Source: Scyliorhinus canicula
Lineage: Eukaryota
Direction of reading: 5' to 3'
Assembly (NCBI RefSeq): GCF_902713615.1
Contig: NW_024055478.1
Span: 248,001 to 283,555, forward strand
Length of the DNA: 35,555 nt
A model generated the notes under the pieces. The model did no database searches, was not told the origin of the DNA, and worked only from the letters and a program-made list of their open reading frames with translations. Shown piece by piece: positions 1 through 17,643 of this stretch. Numbering within the stretch: the stretch's first letter is position 1; every line of letters starts with the position of its first letter. The translations under genes were made by a program, and so were the position numbers.

Positions 1-30
1 GCTGCTCCACTGTGTCCTGGTGGCTCCAAT
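1..30 (-). CDS. Start of second exon (V-domain-like), runs off the left edge of the window
   Basis: Branch-like CTAAT, T-rich tract and CAG acceptor (33-31) define a 152-bp intron (31-182). The splice keeps frame and gives N-W-S-H-Q-D-T-V-E-Q, like the xxVxQ start of TCR/Ig V framework 1. Confidence 0.55.
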   Translation of the reverse strand, partial: MGATRTQWSS

Positions 31-182
31 CTGACGTAAAAATTAGATTAAGAGCAACGATCAGTATCAACCCCAAATTGATCAACTTAATCTTCACCAC
101 CGCTATTGTTTGCACCAACAATAACGTCAGGGTTACAGCAGCCAGGAGGAGAATGGAATTTTACTAGGAAGGAAATACTTAC

Positions 183-231
183 TGAGAAGTGATATAATGA
201 TGAGCATCTGAGCGAGCCGGTTCCCCATCAT
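183..231 (-). CDS. Leader (signal peptide) exon of an Ig-superfamily gene, probably an antigen-receptor V segment
   Basis: Minus strand reads aggATG ATG GGG AAC CGG CTC GCT CAG ATG CTC ATC ATT ATA TCA CTT CTC A|GTAAGT = MMGNRLAQMLIIISLL + 1 nt. 49 nt, phase 1, hydrophobic core, good Kozak context, GTAAGT donor at 182-177. Confidence 0.65.
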
Positions 232-294
232 CCTTCCTGAGTCTGGAACTCTGCAGTGAGAGGAATCCTCTGTCAGAGACAGAAATACCGATCG

Positions 295-382
295 CCGTCA
301 CACTGCATTGCTCATCCAGCCAATGGCAGAGGCAGAAATGCAGACCCCCGTCACACTGCACTGCTCATCCGAACAATGGCAG
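295..382. repeat. Local tandem duplication, 35-bp unit, period 53
   Basis: ccgtcacactgcattgctcatccagccaatggcag (295-329) vs ccgtcacactgcactgctcatccgaacaatggcag (348-382). Confidence 0.85.
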
Positions 383-510
383 CGACAGCAACTTCTCCAC
401 TGACACAATTGGGTCAGAGCGAGAGCAGCAACCGCAAGCTGTGGGCGGGGATACCGCAGACTCAGAGTGACGTGTGTGCTGACTCTCAGCTGCACTCGGA
501 GCGGAAATAG
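295..510 (-). promoter_or_regulatory. Putative promoter of the leader-exon gene
   Basis: CCAAT at 320-324, GC box GGGCGGGG at 443-450, CRE-like AGTGACGT at 466-473 and ETS-like GCGGAAAT at 501-508, all 90-280 bp upstream of the minus-strand ATG at 231. Confidence 0.45.
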
Positions 511-976
511 GAAGGGATGAATCTGCAGAAGGCAGAAGACTGTGACCATCCTGCACCTGCTCACTGTTCAAGCCACTAAGAAGAAATCGAGCGGGAGGGA
601 CATAAAGCCCATTTAAACACGGCTTCTGACACTAGACACTGTGTCACTGGATCTGCAACTAGTCTGCCTGTCAATGTAGAGCATCAAAAGAGCAGAAGGA
701 TAAACAAATCTGCCAATATTTGTTCTTCGTGGGGCTGGGATGAAATTAACCCGGCTGATGGAGGTAAACCTCTATTAACTATGAGTGTGCGTAAATTCTA
801 ATCAACCTGTTAAACTGTACTGATGAGTATAATTTATTACTTACTGTTCAAGAGTACCGCCAGTATTATGAGAAACGTGTCTGATTGAATCGCTCAGTGA
901 ATGGGAATTAAATGAGTCAGATTTTTGGAAGGAGAGAGGGAACCCGGGTTCTGTTCAGCTCATTGTTCCACCCACA

Positions 977-992
977 CACAGCAGGGGGCCAG
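977..992 (+). promoter_or_regulatory. CTCF-like motif (imperfect)
   Basis: cacagcagggggccag; ACAGCAGGGGGCCA vs core CCASYAGRKGGCRS (3 mismatches at the edges). Confidence 0.4.
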
Positions 993-1066
993 GCCCATTG
1001 TGACATCACTGAGGATACCTCTGTTGTTGGTCTCATGTGACTTTCCAATCATCATGCGTGGGCTTT

Positions 1067-1083
1067 GCGCCCTCTGCTGGTGG
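1067..1083 (-). promoter_or_regulatory. CTCF motif (perfect core)
   Basis: Reverse complement is CCACCAGCAGAGGGCGC; CCAGCAGAGGGCGC matches CCASYAGRKGGCRS 14/14. Confidence 0.65.
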
Positions 1084-1140
1084 ATTCTGTTCAATCCGGT
1101 TCCGAATGGGGGTTACTGGATGGATTTAACGTTTATAATA

Positions 1141-1182
1141 TAGTAATCTTTATTGTCACAAGTAGGCTTACATTAACGCTGT
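1141..1182 (-). mobile_element. SINE 3' tail fragment
   Basis: taatctttattgtcacaagtaggcttacattaac resembles the tail of the SINE at 14167-14337. Confidence 0.45.
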
Positions 1183-1385
1183 AATTATTGATTTTTATGT
1201 CAAAACATCAATGTCAGGAATGAGAATTGACTATTTAAATATGGATACTGCTCATTATTTCTTTCTCTGACCCAGGTCCAATCCATTGCACTGGGAGTCC
1301 GGTCGCACCTATCCCAGAGCTGGAACAGGAATCCAGTGCGTTCTGGATTTCCAGACCCCTGAGCCAACCCCAACCGTTATTCGAA

Positions 1386-2640: not shown

Positions 2641-3195
2641 CTAGAAGAGTATGGAGGTTATTATGGAGCTGTATAGAATGCGGGCTAGCCCGCAGCTGGA
2701 GTATTTTCTGCACATCTGGTCACCACATTATGGGAAGAAAGTGATTGCACCAGAGAGGGTGCAGAGGAGATTAATCAGGAAGTTTTCTGAGCAGGAGTGT
2801 TTCAGTTGTGAAGAGAGGTTGAATAGGCTGGGATTATTGCCCTTAAAGTAGAGAATGTTGCGGACGATCTGATCGAGGTGTTCAGAATTCTGAGGAACAC
2901 AGAATTGAAGACACTTTTCCCCTCAGTAGAGCGGGCAATAACCAGGGGGCATAGATTTAAGTTAAGGGGTAGGAATTTGGAAGGAATTTAAGCGTAGTTA
3001 GAACCTGTAACACATTGTCTGTGTTCCCGAGGCGGGAACACTCACAACCCTTAAGAAGCGTTGAGATGAGGACTTGAAACGCCATCACATACAAGGCTAC
3101 AGACCAAGTGCGAGGAAATTGCTTTGGACTAGATGGATACTTGATGGCTGGGGCAAACACAATGGGCCAAAGGGCCTGTTCTTTGCTGTAAAACT
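2641..3195 (+). mobile_element. CR1-clade LINE 3' fragment
   Basis: ORF 2651-2851 (MELYR...LEY...WSPHY...ERVQRR...EERLNRLGL) followed by a CR1-type 3' UTR ending gggccaaagggcctgttct. Confidence 0.85.
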
Positions 3196-3453: not shown

Positions 3454-3559
3454 CATGATGTGGAGATGCCGGCGTTGGACTGGGGTGAGCACAGTAAGAA
3501 GTCTTACAACACCAGGTTAAAGTCCAACAGGTTTGTTTCAAACACGAGCTTTCGGAGCA
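3454..3559 (-). repeat. Inverted pseudo-LTR segment of the Penelope insertion
   Basis: 106-bp reverse complement of 5158-5263. Confidence 0.95.
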
Positions 3560-4994
3560 GTTGAACCAGGAACATTCCTCGTCACAATGGATGTCTCGGC
3601 ACTCTACACCAGCATCCCCCATGACGACGGCATTGCTGCAACAGCCTCAGTCCTCAACACCGACAACTGCCAATCTCCAGACGCAATTCTGCAACTCATC
3701 CGTTTCATTCTAGACCACAACGTCTTCACCTTCGACAACAAATTCTTCATCCAGACGCACGGAACAGCCATGGGGACCAAATTTGCACCTCAATATGCCA
3801 ACATCTTCATGCACAAGTTTGAACAGGACTTCCTCACCACACAGGACTTTCAACCGATGCTATACACCAGATACATCGATGACATTTTTTTCCTTTGGAC
3901 CCACGGCGAGACATCACTGAAACGACTACACGATGACATCAATAAGTTCCATCCCACCATCAAACTCACCATGGACTATTCTCCAAATTCAGTTCCATTC
4001 TTGGACACACTCGTCTCCATCAAGGACGGTCACCTCAGCACCTCGCTTTACCGCAAGCCCACAGATAATCTCACGATGCTCCACTTCTCCAGCTTTCACC
4101 CGAAACACATTAAAGAAGCCATCCCCTATGGACAAGCCCTCCGTATACACAGGATCTGCTCAGACAAGGAGGAGCGCAACAGACACCTACAGATGCTGAA
4201 AGATGCCCTCGTACGAACGGGATATGGCGCTCGACTCATTGATCGACAGTTCCACCGCGCCACAGCAAAAAAACCGCACCGATCTCCTCAGAAGACAAAC
4301 ACGGGACACCACTGACAGAGTACCCTTCGTCGTCCAGTACTTTCCTGGGGCGGAGAAACTACGACATCTTCTTCGCAGCCTCCAACACATCATCAGCGAG
4401 GATGGACATCTTGCCAAGGTCATCCCCACACCCCCACTACTGGCCTTCAAACAACCGCGCAACCTCAAACAAACCATTGTTTGCAGCAAATTACCCAGCC
4501 TTCAGAACAGCAACCACAACACCACAAAACCCTGCCAGGGTAATCTCTGCAAGACATGCCAGATCATCGACATGGACACCACCATTACACGTGGAAACAC
4601 CACCCACCAGGTACGCGGCGCATACTCGTGCGACTCGACCAATGTAGTCTACCTCATACGCTGCAGGAAAGGATGTCCCGAAGCGTGGTACATTGGCGAG
4701 ACCATGCAGACACTGCGACAACGAATAAACGGGCATCGTGCGACTATCAACAGGCAGGACTGTTCCCTTCCAGTTGGGGATCACTTCAGCAGTCAAGGAC
4801 ATTCAGCCTCTGATCTCCGGGTCAGCATTCTACAAGGAGGCCTTCAGGAGACGCGACAACGCAAAATTGCTGAGCAAAAACTTATAGCTAAGTTCCGCAC
4901 GCATGAATGCGGACTCAACCGGGATCTGGGATTCATGTCGCATTACATTCGGCCCTCACCAACAAGCCTGGACTTGCAGAGGCCTACCGACTGA
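3560..4994 (+). pseudogene. 5'-truncated Penelope ORF (RT C-half + GIY-YIG), 1 frameshift
   Basis: LVTMDVSALYTSI, GTAMGTKFAPQYANIFM, RYIDDIF in ORF 3533-4315; VVYLIRC...YIGET...RINGHR in ORF 4203-4994; the frames join at A7 4267-4273. Confidence 0.9.
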
Positions 4995-5106
4995 ACTGGC
5001 TTGGGACAATTCACACCTCTTTAACCTGGAGTTACCTCTCTCTCTGCATCTTTGATGATTTGATTGCCTGCAGGTGCTCGCATTCCGGGGCATCTCTGAC
5101 TGTGTC

Positions 5107-5114
5107 TATATAAA
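5107..5114 (+). promoter_or_regulatory. TATA box in Penelope pseudo-LTR (second copy at 8091-8098)
   Basis: TATATAAA 30 nt upstream of an Inr-like CCATTC (A at 5137). Confidence 0.5.
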
Positions 5115-5139
5115 CATTTCTGGAACAAGCCTTTCCATT

Positions 5140-5174
5140 CACCTGAAGAAGGAGCCGTGCTCCGAAAGCTCGTG
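5140..5174 (+). ncRNA. Minimal type I hammerhead ribozyme
   Basis: CAC-CUGAAGA-A-GGAGC(CGU)GCUCC-GAAA-GC-UC-GUG: both core boxes, 5-bp stem II, palindromic AGCU stem III, stem I CAC/GUG. Predicted cleavage after C5171. Confidence 0.85.
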
Positions 5175-5260
5175 TTTGAAACAAACCTGTTGGACTTTAA
5201 CCTGGTGTTGTAAGACTTCTTACTGTGCTCACCCCAGTCCAACGCCGGCATCTCCACATC

Positions 5261-7979
5261 ATGGCTACCATTGACACCGCAAACTGCCGGCTCAAAGTGG
5301 AGAGGATCTCCAGGAAGATCGCGCATATAGACACTGACATTCAGTTTCTACAAAGATGCAAAAAAGCAGACAAGATCCCGAAAGGACTACAGATCAAAAA
5401 CCCACTCAAGTCGACTTACAACACAGACTACGCTGAAAGACTCTGCCACCGCACCTCTGTCACACTCCTCAAACACCTCGTACACCAACTCTACAGCAGT
5501 CGACGCAACCTGGAAACCAAGAGAAAGGCCATATTCTCAACTTGCGCTCAGGACACAGCAGACCAGCTGCGGAACACCGCCAAACAGATGAGACAGCAAT
5601 ACTATGCCACCTACATGCACACCAAGAACAGGAAGCTTGAGAAACTTGGCATCACCACCAGCAGCAATCAAGCTTCTCCCGGTACAACAGTCGAAAACAA
5701 TACAGGGAAATCCATTGTCAACTTGTCAGACTACACCCTTCAACCAGACGAAATCGAAGTCCTCAGCAGAGGGCTCAATTTCTGCACCACCACCAAAATG
5801 GACCCCATCAGTCTCGCGGCAGATACGGAGGAATTCATCAGGCGAATGAGGCTCCGGGAATTCTTCCACAGACCCCAAGAGGCCGACAGCGAACCCAGGG
5901 ACACGACCAATGAACCGGAACAGCAGACCGCGAGATCTGCAGTGCAGCAACCGAAAAGGAAAGAGTCAAATTGGACCCCTCCGGAAGGCCGCTGCCCTAG
6001 ACTCGACATGTATGTTCAAGCCGTCAGAAGTCGTGTCAATGCCAGATTCATCACTCGCAATCACAAGGCAGCCTCAAACGTCACCCAAGCACAACGCAAC
6101 GCCATCCGCACTCTCAAGACCAACCGCAACATCGTCATCAAACCAGCAGACAAAGGAGGGGCCACCGTCATACTGAACAGAACAGACTACTGCAAAGAAG
6201 TATACCGACAACTCGACAACCAGGAACACTACAGGCAGTTACCCGCAGATCCAACCAAGGAACACATCCGCCAACTCAGCAGACTGATCAAGACCTTAGA
6301 TCCAGACCTTCAGAACACCCTACGTGCTCTCATCCCACGTAATCCCCGCATTGGAGATCTCTACTGCCTCCCGAAAATACACAAGGCCAACACACCAGGC
6401 CGTCCTATCGTTTCAGGCAATGGGACCCTGTGTGAGAACCTCTCTGGCCACATCGAGGGCATCTTGAAACCCATCGTACAAGGTACACCCAGCTTCTGTC
6501 GCGACACGACGGACTTCCTACAGAAACTCAGCACCCATGGACCAGTTGAACCAGGAACATTCCTCGTCACAATGGATGTCTCGGCACTCTACACCAGCAT
6601 CCCCCATGACGACGGCATTGCTGCAACAGCCTCAGTCCTCAACACCGACAACTGCCAATCTCCAGACGCAATTCTGCAACTCATCCGTTTCATTCTAGAC
6701 CACAACGTCTTCACCTTCGACAACAAATTCTTCATCCAGACGCACGGAACAGCCATGGGGACCAAATTTGCACCTCAATATGCCAACATCTTCATGCACA
6801 AGTTTGAACAGGACTTCCTCACCACACAGGACTTTCAACCGATGCTATACACCAGATACATCGATGACATTTTTTTCCTTTGGACCCACGGCGAGACATC
6901 ACTGAAACGACTACACGATGACATCAATAAGTTCCATCCCACCATCAACTCACCATGGACTATTCTCCAAATTCAGTTCCATTCTTGGACACACTCGTCT
7001 CCATCAAGGACGGTCACCTCAGCACCTCGCTTTACCGCAAGCCCACAGATAATCTCACGATGCTCCACTTCTCCAGCTTTCACCCGAAACACATTAAAGA
7101 AGCCATCCCCTATGGACAAGCCCTCCGTATACACAGGATCTGCTCAGACAAGGAGGAGCGCAACAGACACCTACAGATGCTGAAAGATGCCCTCGTACGA
7201 ACGGGATATGGCGCTCGACTCATTGATCGACAGTTCCACCGCGCCACAGCAAAAAAACCGCACCGATCTCCTCAGAAGACAAACACGGGACACCACTGAC
7301 AGAGTACCCTTCGTCGTCCAGTACTTTCCTGGGGCGGAGAAACTACGACATCTTCTTCGCAGCCTCCAACACATCATCAGCGAGGATGGACATCTTGCCA
7401 AGGTCATCCCCACACCCCCACTACTGGCCTTCAAACAACCGCGCAACCTCAAACAAACCATTGTTTGCAGCAAATTACCCAGCCTTCAGAACAGCAACCA
7501 CAACACCACAAAACCCTGCCAGGGTAATCTCTGCAAGACATGCCAGATCATCGACATGGACACCACCATTACACGTGGAAACACCACCCACCAGGTACGC
7601 GGCGCATACTCGTGCGACTCGACCAATGTAGTCTACCTCATACGCTGCAGGAAAGGATGTCCCGAAGCGTGGTACATTGGCGAGACCATGCAGACACTGC
7701 GACAACGAATAAACGGGCATCGTGCGACTATCAACAGGCAGGACTGTTCCCTTCCAGTTGGGGAATCACTTCAGCAGTCAAGGACATTCAGCCTCTGATC
7801 TCCGGGTCAGCATTCTACAAGGAGGCCTTCAGGAGACGCGACAACGCAAAATTGCTGAGCAAAAACTTATAGCTAAGTTCCGCACGCATGAATGCGGACT
7901 CAACCGGGATCTGGGATTCATGTCGCATTACATTCGGCCCTCACCAACAAGCCTGGACTTGCAGAGGCCTACCGACTGA
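5261..7979 (+). CDS. Penelope-like RT/GIY-YIG polyprotein, about 905 aa if three 1-bp indels are corrected
   Basis: MATIDTANCRLKVE... IKPADKGG, YCLPKIHK, PGRPIVS, RYIDD, GIY-YIG. Frame breaks at 6947-6948 (-1), 7251-7257 (+1) and 7764-7765 (+1). Confidence 0.9.
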
Positions 7980-16201: not shown

Positions 16202-17105
16202 TTACTTGACTAAGTTTACTATGAGATTTCCAAGATATTTGCCGCATTCCTCAACCTTCTCTGAATTTTCTCTGCGTCACTGCATAAATGCACGTGTTGG
16301 TGCAACTGCTCAGCAGCTGAAGCATGTTTCCACTTTCTGGCGGATAAATCTGGGGTCATTGAAATTGGATCTACGAAAATAAGGTTCATTTGTAATTTTT
16401 CACGCACAGGAAATCCACAACATATGTCATCCACAACAGAATGAAGCTCCGGAGATGGCGAAGAGTAAGACAATAGACTTCCTCTGTTCAGCATCTCTGG
16501 ATCACTCTGATTCTCACCACTGCTGTTATCCCGGAGTCTCCGGCGGGATCTACTGGCCGCCATGATATGCCTGACGGTCAGAGCATTGAATAGCAAAATC
16601 AGGAGGAAGGGCAGACCTGGATTTAATACATGTGCAAACCAGTCATAGGCTGTCCATGCAAGTGAGGTGGAGAAGCTTGATTTTACGTTACAAAACCACG
16701 GCACATTGTTCATTATAAAGAGTGGTTCATAAATAAAGTACCAGGGAACGCTTTTGAAACAGCTCAACAAACAAACGGTTCCTATCACCACAGCTGCTGT
16801 TTTCTCGGTGCAATAGTTTGTCTTCAGTTTCTGGGAACAAATGGCGATACTACGATCAAAGGTGAAAGCGACGGTTAACCAGACAGAACTCTCGGTGGCC
16901 GCATAGATTATCACGGTGCTCAGAGTGCATGCTGGAGTCAATGACATAAAGCCAACTGGAAAATAGATGCCAATAATCCGATTGAATATGACAGCGGTGA
17001 CAACGACTAGGAGATCAGTCACTGCCATAGACACCAGATACCAAGTGATGCATTTGGAGAGACCACACCTTCCCCTGGAGAGGACCACGATCGCCACCAA
17101 GTTAA
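16202..17105 (-). CDS. Exon 2 of a class A 7TM GPCR (shark-expanded GPR139-like family); 3' third disrupted by about 6 one-base indels
   Basis: Acceptor ctccttgtgtctctcag|TTAAC. VNLVAIVVLSRGRCGLSKCITWYLVSMAVTDLL, SVWLTVAFTFDRSIAIC, LPFLLILLFNALTVRHI. After correcting indels: RRKSIVLLFAISG...LQLLSSCTNTCIYAVTQRKFRE...LVK*, TAA at 16204-16202. Confidence 0.9.
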
Positions 17106-17643
17106 CTGAGAGACACAAGGAGATTTAAATTGTAAAATTACTAAACATATTCCAACCATGCACATGGCATAATTGTGACTTTTTACAGTTCATCTTCGTT
17201 ATGGAGGACACCTAACACAGTTATTCTGGTTTTTTTAATGTCAATTCTGTTTCAGAAAACGCTGCAAGGGCATCCTAAATTTATGCAGCATCTTTAAAGC
17301 AAAAGGTGTCTCAAGTCGCTTCAGAGAAGATTGATACATCAAAATGTGTCACCACACCACATGAGAAGGTATTGTGCCAGATGTGGAATAATTGGACAAG
17401 CAGGTAAGCTTAAAGAAAGCATTGAAGAAGCAGATTGAGGAAGAAAGTAAATGCGATTGAAGGCGGCCATTTCATAGCGACGGACCAAACGGTTAAAGAT
17501 CTGAAGGTCACGTTCAATATTTGGCATTCCAATTTTGGATCATGTATCAGGTAAACGGGAAAAGCCTGTTAACACAGGTGACATATTAGTTACATTTGTA
17601 TTTTTAAAGTGTATAATTAGACGAGGGTGACACGGTGACACAA

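What the first reader, a model, noticed from the sequence alone, without database searches (positions are those of the whole stretch)
1..231. Hidden spliced leader + V-like exon: probable antigen-receptor V segment missed by the ORF track
Seen: a 49-nt ATG exon with a GTAAGT donor, a 152-bp intron with branch site, T-tract and AG, and an in-frame phase-1 junction giving MMGNRLAQMLIIISLLNWSHQ-DTVEQ. Known: Ig/TCR V segments have a 46-55-nt phase-1 leader exon, a short intron and FR1 starting xxVxQ (e.g. the EDVEQ/ENVEQ type in TCR alpha V). Inference: a TCR-like V segment, or another V-set receptor, continuing left of the window.
Basis: partly seen in the sequence, partly recalled or inferred. 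Interest (0 to 1): 0.75.

Follow-up and report, generated by a model that had tools for sequence, protein, structure and literature searches.

The report
Spliced leader of shark TCR V gene
The left edge of this window holds the promoter, signal-peptide exon, short intron and first ten codons of an ordinary, transcribed shark antigen-receptor (T-cell-receptor type) V gene whose body lies just outside the window; the splice is real, but the gene is of a well-known kind.

Summary
On the minus strand there is an ATG exon at 231-183 (49 nt), a GTAAGT donor, a 152-nt intron (182-31), a CAG acceptor and an in-frame phase-1 junction. Together they read MMGNRLAQMLIIISLL-N-WSHQDTVEQ.

By sequence alone such a leader-like exon is only modestly unlikely, at 0.17 expected per window. 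Transcriptome-like contigs from two independent studies carry exactly the predicted 183|30 joint (GT..AG). They show no depth over the intron and run on past the window's left end. Two further runs have contigs ending exactly at the donor.

An earlier, unchecked scan note places a V exon with a recombination signal 1.2-1.6 kb further left, and other notes describe this catshark genome's TCR V arrays.

Best reading: the 5' part of a conventional split-leader TCR V gene segment. TCR alpha/delta is likeliest and beta is not excluded.

The V domain itself (Cys23, Trp41, YxC) and the RSS lie off the window and could not be retrieved. All protein, contig and metagenome look-ups were blank.

This is an ordinary gene of a known kind, so interest is low. 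The scan has already noted many V genes elsewhere in this genome.

The parts
271..376 (-). Two tandem 53-bp copies (81% alike) immediately upstream of, and overlapping, the 5' limit of the RNA contigs. On the gene strand each copy carries CCATTG (ATTGG, an inverted CCAAT box, only in the proximal copy) and GTGTGACGG (a TGACG half-CRE). Presumed core promoter; function inferred only.
   Evidence: tandem repeat; motifs read from the sequence; the X14 contig reaches 298
232..298 (-). 5' untranslated region, minimum extent. It has no upstream ATG. There is an A at -3 of the first ATG, and the second ATG has A at -3 and G at +4.
   Evidence: table 8: contigs cover 183-298 (X14), 183-278 (X11), 183-266 (X13) and 183-237 (X25). 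Sequence.
183..231 (-). L-PART1, the first leader (signal-peptide) exon: 49 nt encoding MMGNRLAQMLIIISLL plus the first base of the Asn codon. It has an n-region with Arg and an 11-residue hydrophobic core.
   Evidence: covered by contigs of four runs, all ending exactly at 183
31..182 (-). Leader intron: 152 nt, GTAAGT...CAG, phase 1, removed in transcripts.
   Evidence: sequence, table 5 (joint 30|183, skips 152, in X11 and X14) and table 2 (zero depth over 41-160)
1..30 (-). Start of the V exon. The rest of the leader (..N-W-S-H; an 11-nt L-PART2) is followed by the first residues of the V region, Q-D-T-V-E-Q. The last base is C, so the next residue is L, P, H, Q or R. The exon runs off the window. 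It contains the heptamer CACAGTG in codons D-T-V (16..10).
   Evidence: (30 letters laid after the joint, and contigs run over the end)

Best explanation
Window 1-376 (minus strand) is the 5' end of a conventional, transcribed, split-leader V gene segment of a rearranging antigen receptor in a catshark TCR V array. TCR alpha/delta is most likely (about 0.55 of the total) and TCR beta is not excluded.

How it works:
1. Transcription starts at or upstream of position 298, inside a duplicated 53-bp promoter element, and runs leftwards.
2. The 49-nt L-PART1 exon encodes most of a signal peptide.
3. A 152-nt phase-1 intron is spliced out.
4. The V exon supplies the last leader residues and then the V domain, beginning QDTVEQ.
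5. The body of the V exon (about 270 more nt) and its recombination signal lie beyond the window's left end.

Shown: the exon and intron anatomy, the use of the splice in RNA, and that the transcript continues at least 169 nt beyond the window.

Inferred: that the continuation is an Ig V domain ending in an RSS, that it rearranges to J (or D-J) segments lying further left, and which TCR chain it serves.
For: Anatomy:
- L-PART1 is 49 nt, the junction is phase 1, and the intron is 152 nt with GTAAGT and CAG.
- The leader has a charged n-region and an 11-residue hydrophobic core.
- With the usual 11-nt L-PART2, the V region reads Q1-D2-T3-V4-E5-Q6. This is the register of many TRAV genes such as human TRAV12-2, QKEVEQ (my own knowledge of IMGT numbering).

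Splice used:
- The joint 30|183, GT..AG on the gene strand, stands in contigs of X11 and X14, which come from two studies.
- All four runs show zero depth over the intron and over 300-1120 but cover 183-298. This fits RNA, not DNA.
- The X14 contig has 199 nt downstream of the donor, of which 169 lie beyond the window.
- The X13 and X25 contigs end exactly at 183 and carry 465 and 268 further nt.

Context:
- Earlier scan note s1-268284 places a leader-V exon with a perfect RSS 1584 to about 1213 nt left of the window start.
- Notes on this genome describe TCR alpha/delta and beta V arrays of a catshark. I did not check these notes.
- xVEQ starts are documented for shark TCR V genes (nurse-shark beta V2 and V3, YVEQSP; PMC5931798).
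Against: - The defining parts of a V segment (Cys23, Trp41, YxC, heptamer-spacer-nonamer) are off the window and were not seen.
- Three protein searches with the spliced and unspliced peptides were blank.
- The RNA status of the runs is a guess by the tool, and the tissues are unknown.
- No other V exon or RSS lies in the 35 kb upstream, so within the window itself there is no array.
- Leader exon, phase-1 intron and V-type exon are shared by non-rearranging IgSF genes.
Some of the expression therefore comes from a paralogue or another splice form.
- The donor's exon side (TCA) is off consensus.
Confidence: 0.75

Rival explanations
1. It is the first two exons of a non-rearranging V-set immunoglobulin-superfamily gene (a surface receptor with a signal-peptide exon and a V-type domain exon). 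The gene happens to sit beside a TCR V array and has further exons to the left instead of an RSS.
For: Signal-peptide exons ending in phase 1, followed by an Ig-domain exon, are general to IgSF genes (established knowledge). The X13 contig continues 465 nt past the donor, which is longer than a V exon; that fits further exons as well as V-J-C. No RSS or second V lies within the window.
Against: The 49-nt L-PART1, the 11-nt L-PART2 register and the QDTVEQ start are the specific V-gene layout. A V exon with an RSS is noted about 1.2 kb downstream (unchecked). This genome's TCR arrays are dense with V segments.
Confidence: 0.1
2. It is a V segment, but of another type housed in shark TCR arrays: a NAR-TcR V (followed by its own D and J and a supporting V-delta) or an IgH-type V used by TCR delta.
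For: Earlier notes report NAR-TcR V genes, supporting V-delta genes and IgH-type V-D-J cassettes inside this genome's TCR alpha/delta array. A second V lies only about 1.2 kb downstream, a spacing that recalls the NAR-TcR V / supporting V pairs (my own recollection of Criscitiello et al. 2006).
Against: Window base 1 is C, so the residue after VEQ is L, P, H, Q or R and not Thr. That does not fit the V-x-Q-T-P start that I recall for IgNAR-type V domains. The downstream V is described as having its own ATG and leader in one exon, unlike leaderless supporting V-delta genes. IgH V regions start E/Q-V-Q-L, not xxVEQ.
Confidence: 0.1
3. It is a chance leader-like ORF. The apparent 'spliced' contigs would come from an intronless (processed or germline-fused) paralogue rather than from splicing of this locus.
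For: The sequence pattern alone is expected 0.17 times per window. This genome holds V families whose leader and V lie in one exon. The contigs differ from the window at 1-3 letters per 100 (table 8).
Against: The skipped stretch is bounded exactly by GT..AG with a perfect GTAAGT. Contigs of four runs break exactly at 183. An intronless copy with identical flanks would itself have to derive from this splice. The word depths of 2.6-10 in small transcriptome-sized contig sets are not what sparse DNA gives.
Confidence: 0.04

Closest known systems
Conventional TCR alpha/delta V gene segments (IMGT V-GENE: L-PART1, leader intron, V-EXON, 23-RSS), e.g. human TRAV12-2, TRAV13 and TRAV5 with QKEVEQ / GENVEQ / GEDVEQ starts
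   Same: - A short ATG leader exon (49 nt).
- A phase-1 intron of 152 nt.
- An 11-nt L-PART2.
- The V region starts X-X-X-V-E-Q, which puts V4-E5-Q6 in the usual register.
- It is transcribed from its own promoter.
   Different: Only the first 6 V-region residues are visible. Cys23, Trp41, Cys104 and the RSS were not seen. Assignment to the alpha/delta chain was not tested.
Shark TCR beta V genes (nurse shark beta V2 and V3 begin YVEQSP; PMC5931798, primer table)
   Same: V-E-Q at the start of FR1, in a shark TCR V gene.
   Different: Here the residue after Q starts with C (L/P/H/Q/R), not Ser. The mammalian V-beta promoter decamer occurs once, about 700 nt upstream of the transcribed region, and is not above chance.
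The unsplit-leader ('intronless leader-V') TCR V family of this same genome (earlier notes s1-243507 and s1-268284)
   Same: Same genome. One member lies about 1.2 kb downstream of this gene. Presumably the same array and orientation.
   Different: This gene has the classical split leader with a spliced 152-nt intron. That family has leader and V in one exon.

Membership tests
Ig/TCR V gene segment (IMGT V-GENE) | Short first exon (L-PART1, about 40-60 nt) with ATG, encoding the n- and h-regions of a signal peptide | tested here: met
   Positions 231-183, 49 nt, MMGNRLAQMLIIISLL. Chance rate of such an exon is 0.17 per window.
Ig/TCR V gene segment (IMGT V-GENE) | Short phase-1 GT-AG leader intron that is actually spliced | tested here: met
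   A 152-nt intron; the joint 30|183 is in contigs of X11 and X14; no depth over the intron.
Ig/TCR V gene segment (IMGT V-GENE) | L-PART2 of about 11 nt followed by FR1 | tested here: met
   AT+TGG AGC CAC is 11 nt, then QDTVEQ in the V4-E5-Q6 register. The register comparison is from my own knowledge of TRAV numbering.
Ig/TCR V gene segment (IMGT V-GENE) | V-domain landmarks Cys23, Trp41, hydrophobic 89, Cys104 (YxC) | not testable with these tools
   They lie left of window base 1. Protein searches, contig look-ups and a metagenome scan gave nothing.
Ig/TCR V gene segment (IMGT V-GENE) | Heptamer, 12- or 23-nt spacer and nonamer RSS directly after the V exon | not testable with these tools
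   Expected about 300 nt left of the window start. No RSS anywhere in the window.
Ig/TCR V gene segment (IMGT V-GENE) | Lies in an array of V segments upstream of (D)J-C | tested here: inconclusive
   No other V-set pattern in the 35 kb upstream. An earlier unchecked note places a V+RSS 1.2-1.6 kb downstream.
TCR alpha/delta V (TRAV/TRDV) | Joined in transcripts to TRAJ-TRAC or TRDD-TRDJ-TRDC; sequence clusters with TRAV/TRDV | not testable with these tools
   Contigs continue 169-465 nt beyond exon 1, but their letters are not given. The xxVEQ start is also found in shark beta V genes.
NAR-TcR / IgNAR-type V | FR1 of the V-x-Q-T-P type (recalled from memory, so a lead only), own D and J, extra cysteines | tested here: inconclusive
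   The residue after VEQ begins with C, so it is not Thr. The rest is off the window.
Non-rearranging V-set IgSF gene | The V exon ends in a splice donor (phase 1) and further exons follow; no RSS | not testable with these tools
   The end of the exon is off the window.

The most novel reading that the evidence does not exclude
One promoter and leader exon may serve more than one V exon. Contigs of two runs (X13, X25) contain this leader exon at 97-98% identity and break exactly at its donor, but they do not continue into the window's own exon 2. They could therefore reflect alternative splicing of this leader to another V exon, for example the V lying about 1.2 kb downstream, rather than a paralogous gene with a near-identical leader.
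Probability: 0.05. Interest if true: 0.5.

Novelty: new member of a known kind. Interest (0 to 1): 0.12.

Why it matters
It matters little beyond annotation.

For anyone annotating the catshark TCR loci it adds three things:
- one expressed split-leader V gene;
- its likely promoter, a duplicated 53-bp element with CCAAT and half-CRE motifs;
- the fact that 35 kb upstream of it holds no V segment, only retroelements and a truncated rhodopsin-type GPCR. That may mark a gap or an edge of the V array.

It does not bear on any open question about antigen-receptor evolution.

Tried and rejected
1. The 26-aa spliced peptide is too short for the search for homologous proteins, whose minimum is 40 aa. 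To bring longer proteins into the tool's length range, I aligned the peptide, and the 53-aa unspliced reading of window 2-160(-), with unrelated stop-free window ORFs used only as length carriers.
   - Local simulations gave 29-73 bits for exact targets.
   - All three real searches were blank: A3 had 81 candidates, none at E<=10; A4 had no candidate; A5 had 861 candidates, none at E<=10.
   - How the tool sets the length range for an alignment is not known to me. These blanks therefore say only that no protein with this N-terminus was reachable.
2. A metagenome scan for the 30-nt exon 2 found 0 matches.
3. I tried to reach the left flank through genes called on the Penelope-like ORFs at 4203-4991 and 5261-7180. 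Neither is on record.
4. Findings look-ups by sequence and by further words returned nothing. A negative 'from' coordinate is not accepted.
5. A full-text search for DTVEQ found only unrelated papers.
6. The mammalian V-beta promoter decamer AGTGAYRTCA has one match, at 1001-1010(-), about 700 nt upstream of the transcribed part. At least one match occurs in 28 of 100 shuffles, so I rejected it as evidence.
7. A second leader-like exon at 3085(-) lies in repeat-like sequence with no V-like continuation, so I rejected it.
8. A second joint in X11 (464|552, GA..CC, side 20, one contig with 3 mismatches in 43 nt) is non-canonical on both strands. I read it as a length variant of a related copy, not a splice.
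9. The bacterial promoter/terminator scan is irrelevant to this eukaryotic gene.

Full report
**What is there**

Read on the minus strand, window 231-183 is a 49-nt exon that opens with ATGATG and encodes MMGNRLAQMLIIISLL plus one base. It is followed by GTAAGT. The next 152 nt (182-31) contain a CTGAT branch-type motif and a T-rich tract, and end in CAG. Window 30-1 then continues the frame, so the spliced product reads MMGNRLAQMLIIISLL-N-WSHQDTVEQ, with the Asn codon split 1/2.

The 5' leader has no upstream ATG, and the second ATG has the better context (A at -3, G at +4).

**Is it more than chance?**

- In 200 first-order Markov simulations of the window, an ATG exon of 40-61 nt in phase 1, followed by GTRAGT, occurs about 2.1 times per 35.5 kb on both strands. 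With an uncharged hydrophobic core it occurs 0.17 times.
- The window holds one other such match, at 3085(-). It sits in repeat-like sequence with nothing V-like behind it.
- All three frames of the 30 exon-2 letters are open, so the frame is fixed only by the leader.
- On sequence alone the pattern is therefore suggestive and no more.

**The splice is used**

The look-up of sequencing runs found four small, transcriptome-sized contig sets of the same species that hold part of 1-330. I laid them on window 1-1200.

| Run (study) | Contig length | Window part covered | Joint 30\|183 | Letters beyond the donor |
|---|---|---|---|---|
| X11 (P4) | 143 nt | 183-278 | yes | 41 |
| X14 (P3) | 315 nt | 183-298 | yes | 199 (169 beyond the window) |
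| X13 (P5) | 552 nt | 183-266 | not listed | 465 |
| X25 (P5) | 323 nt | 183-237 | not listed | 268 |

- The joint skips exactly 152 nt. Its ends are CT..AC on the + strand, which is GT..AG on the gene strand, and all 30 exon-2 letters are laid.
- None of the four runs has any depth over 41-160.
- Depth over 300-1120 is essentially nil apart from one low-depth X11 contig.
- All four runs cover 183 to between 237 and 298.
- The X11 and X14 contigs run over the window's left end.

The tool's 'RNA' label for these runs is a guess. The exon-only coverage, the word depths of 2.6-10 and the exact exon boundaries are what RNA gives, not sparse DNA.

They match the leader at 97-98%. I read them as a paralogous V with a near-identical leader. 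Alternative splicing of this leader is a low-probability alternative.

**Surroundings**

- A 53-bp unit is duplicated in tandem at 271-376, 81% alike.
- On the gene strand both copies carry GTGTGACGG (a TGACG half-CRE), and the proximal copy carries CCATTGG (an inverted CCAAT box).
- The furthest contig starts at 298, inside the proximal copy, so this repeat is probably the core promoter. That is an inference.
- The 35 kb upstream contains no V-set pattern (C..W..YxC) and no heptamer-nonamer pair. It holds tandem Penelope-like retroelement copies (RVT_1, weak GIY-YIG), L1-like elements and a truncated rhodopsin-family GPCR ORF.
- The mammalian V-beta decamer occurs once, far upstream, and is not above chance.

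**Context from the scan's earlier notes (not checked by me)**

- A 372-nt 'intronless leader-V exon with a perfect RSS' lies 1584 nt before the window start. That puts it about 900 nt beyond where this gene's RSS should be.
- A follow-up on that family called it a TCR V family with an unsplit leader.
- Other notes describe this genome as a catshark with TCR alpha/delta arrays (including NAR-TcR and IgH-type V genes) and a TCR beta array.

**What it most likely is**

It is the 5' end of a conventional split-leader V gene segment. With the usual 11-nt L-PART2, the leader is 20 residues (MMGNRLAQMLIIISLLNWSH) and the V region starts Q1-D2-T3-V4-E5-Q6. This is the register of many TRAV genes, for example TRAV12-2 QKEVEQ with Cys23 17 residues after Q6 (my own knowledge). 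On that register, Cys23 is predicted about 50 nt left of the window.

The chain is open:
- xxVEQ is typical of mammalian TRAV.
- Nurse-shark TCR beta V2 and V3 also begin YVEQSP (primer table of PMC5931798).
- Window base 1 is C, so the next residue is L, P, H, Q or R. This argues mildly against the V-x-Q-T-P start that I recall for IgNAR-type V domains.

**What could not be done**

The V body and the RSS are off the window. The single read-laying run prints no contig letters.

- The spliced peptide is too short for the protein search.
- Three searches with the spliced and unspliced peptides, aligned to unrelated carrier ORFs, were blank.
- Look-ups of retroelement ORFs meant to fetch the flank were not on record.
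- A metagenome scan was blank.

Membership in the V-segment family therefore rests on three features met (leader exon, spliced phase-1 intron, L-PART2/FR1 register). One further feature is inconclusive (location in an array), and two defining features are untestable here (the Ig V landmarks and the RSS).

**Verdict**

- Confidence is 0.75 that this is a rearranging TCR-type V segment. Rivals are a non-rearranging V-set IgSF gene (0.10), another V type of the array (0.10) and an artefact or retrocopy (0.04).
- It is a new member of a well-known kind, and interest is low (0.12).
- The scan has already noted many V genes elsewhere in this genome.

Noticed in passing
window 10-16 (minus strand, codons D-T-V of exon 2): A perfect RSS-type heptamer CACAGTG is embedded at the very start of the V region. 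Any nonamer 12 or 23 nt downstream would lie off the window, so it cannot be judged. It is probably a by-product of the ACA GTG codons.
   Followed up: no
window 1140-1185: A stretch of about 40 nt is covered by hundreds of RNA contigs, with summed word depths of 33,000-188,000. Loose ends on both sides read ...ACAATGAAGTTACTGTGAAAATCCCCTAGT. It looks like a fragment of a very abundant shark SINE/LINE-tail repeat.
   Followed up: partly
window 16219-17118 (minus strand): A 299-aa ORF matches Pfam 7tm_1 (rhodopsin-family GPCR, E 1e-19), but only over profile positions 2-193 of 260. The C-terminal third reads as non-receptor sequence, so the gene is either interrupted (an intron, as another note on this window assumes) or truncated. 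A GPCR gene upstream of a TCR V gene recalls the olfactory-receptor genes flanking mammalian TRAV arrays, but this match is not to the olfactory family model.
   Followed up: partly
window 3533-7800 (plus strand): Tandem copies of a Penelope-like retroelement: RVT_1 in 5261-7180 and a weak GIY-YIG match in 4203-4991, with identical ORF pieces repeated about 2984 nt apart. Neither ORF is on record as a called gene.
   Followed up: partly
window 183-266, contigs of runs X13 and X25: Contigs of 552 and 323 nt contain this leader exon (97-98% identical) and break exactly at its donor, but do not continue into window 1-30. This means either a paralogous V with the same leader or another acceptor. 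Their letters could not be read.
   Followed up: no
window 422-552: One X11 contig lies on 422-464 and jumps to 552, skipping 87 nt with non-canonical ends (GA..CC). It is probably a length variant of a related copy of this upstream region that is weakly transcribed.
   Followed up: no
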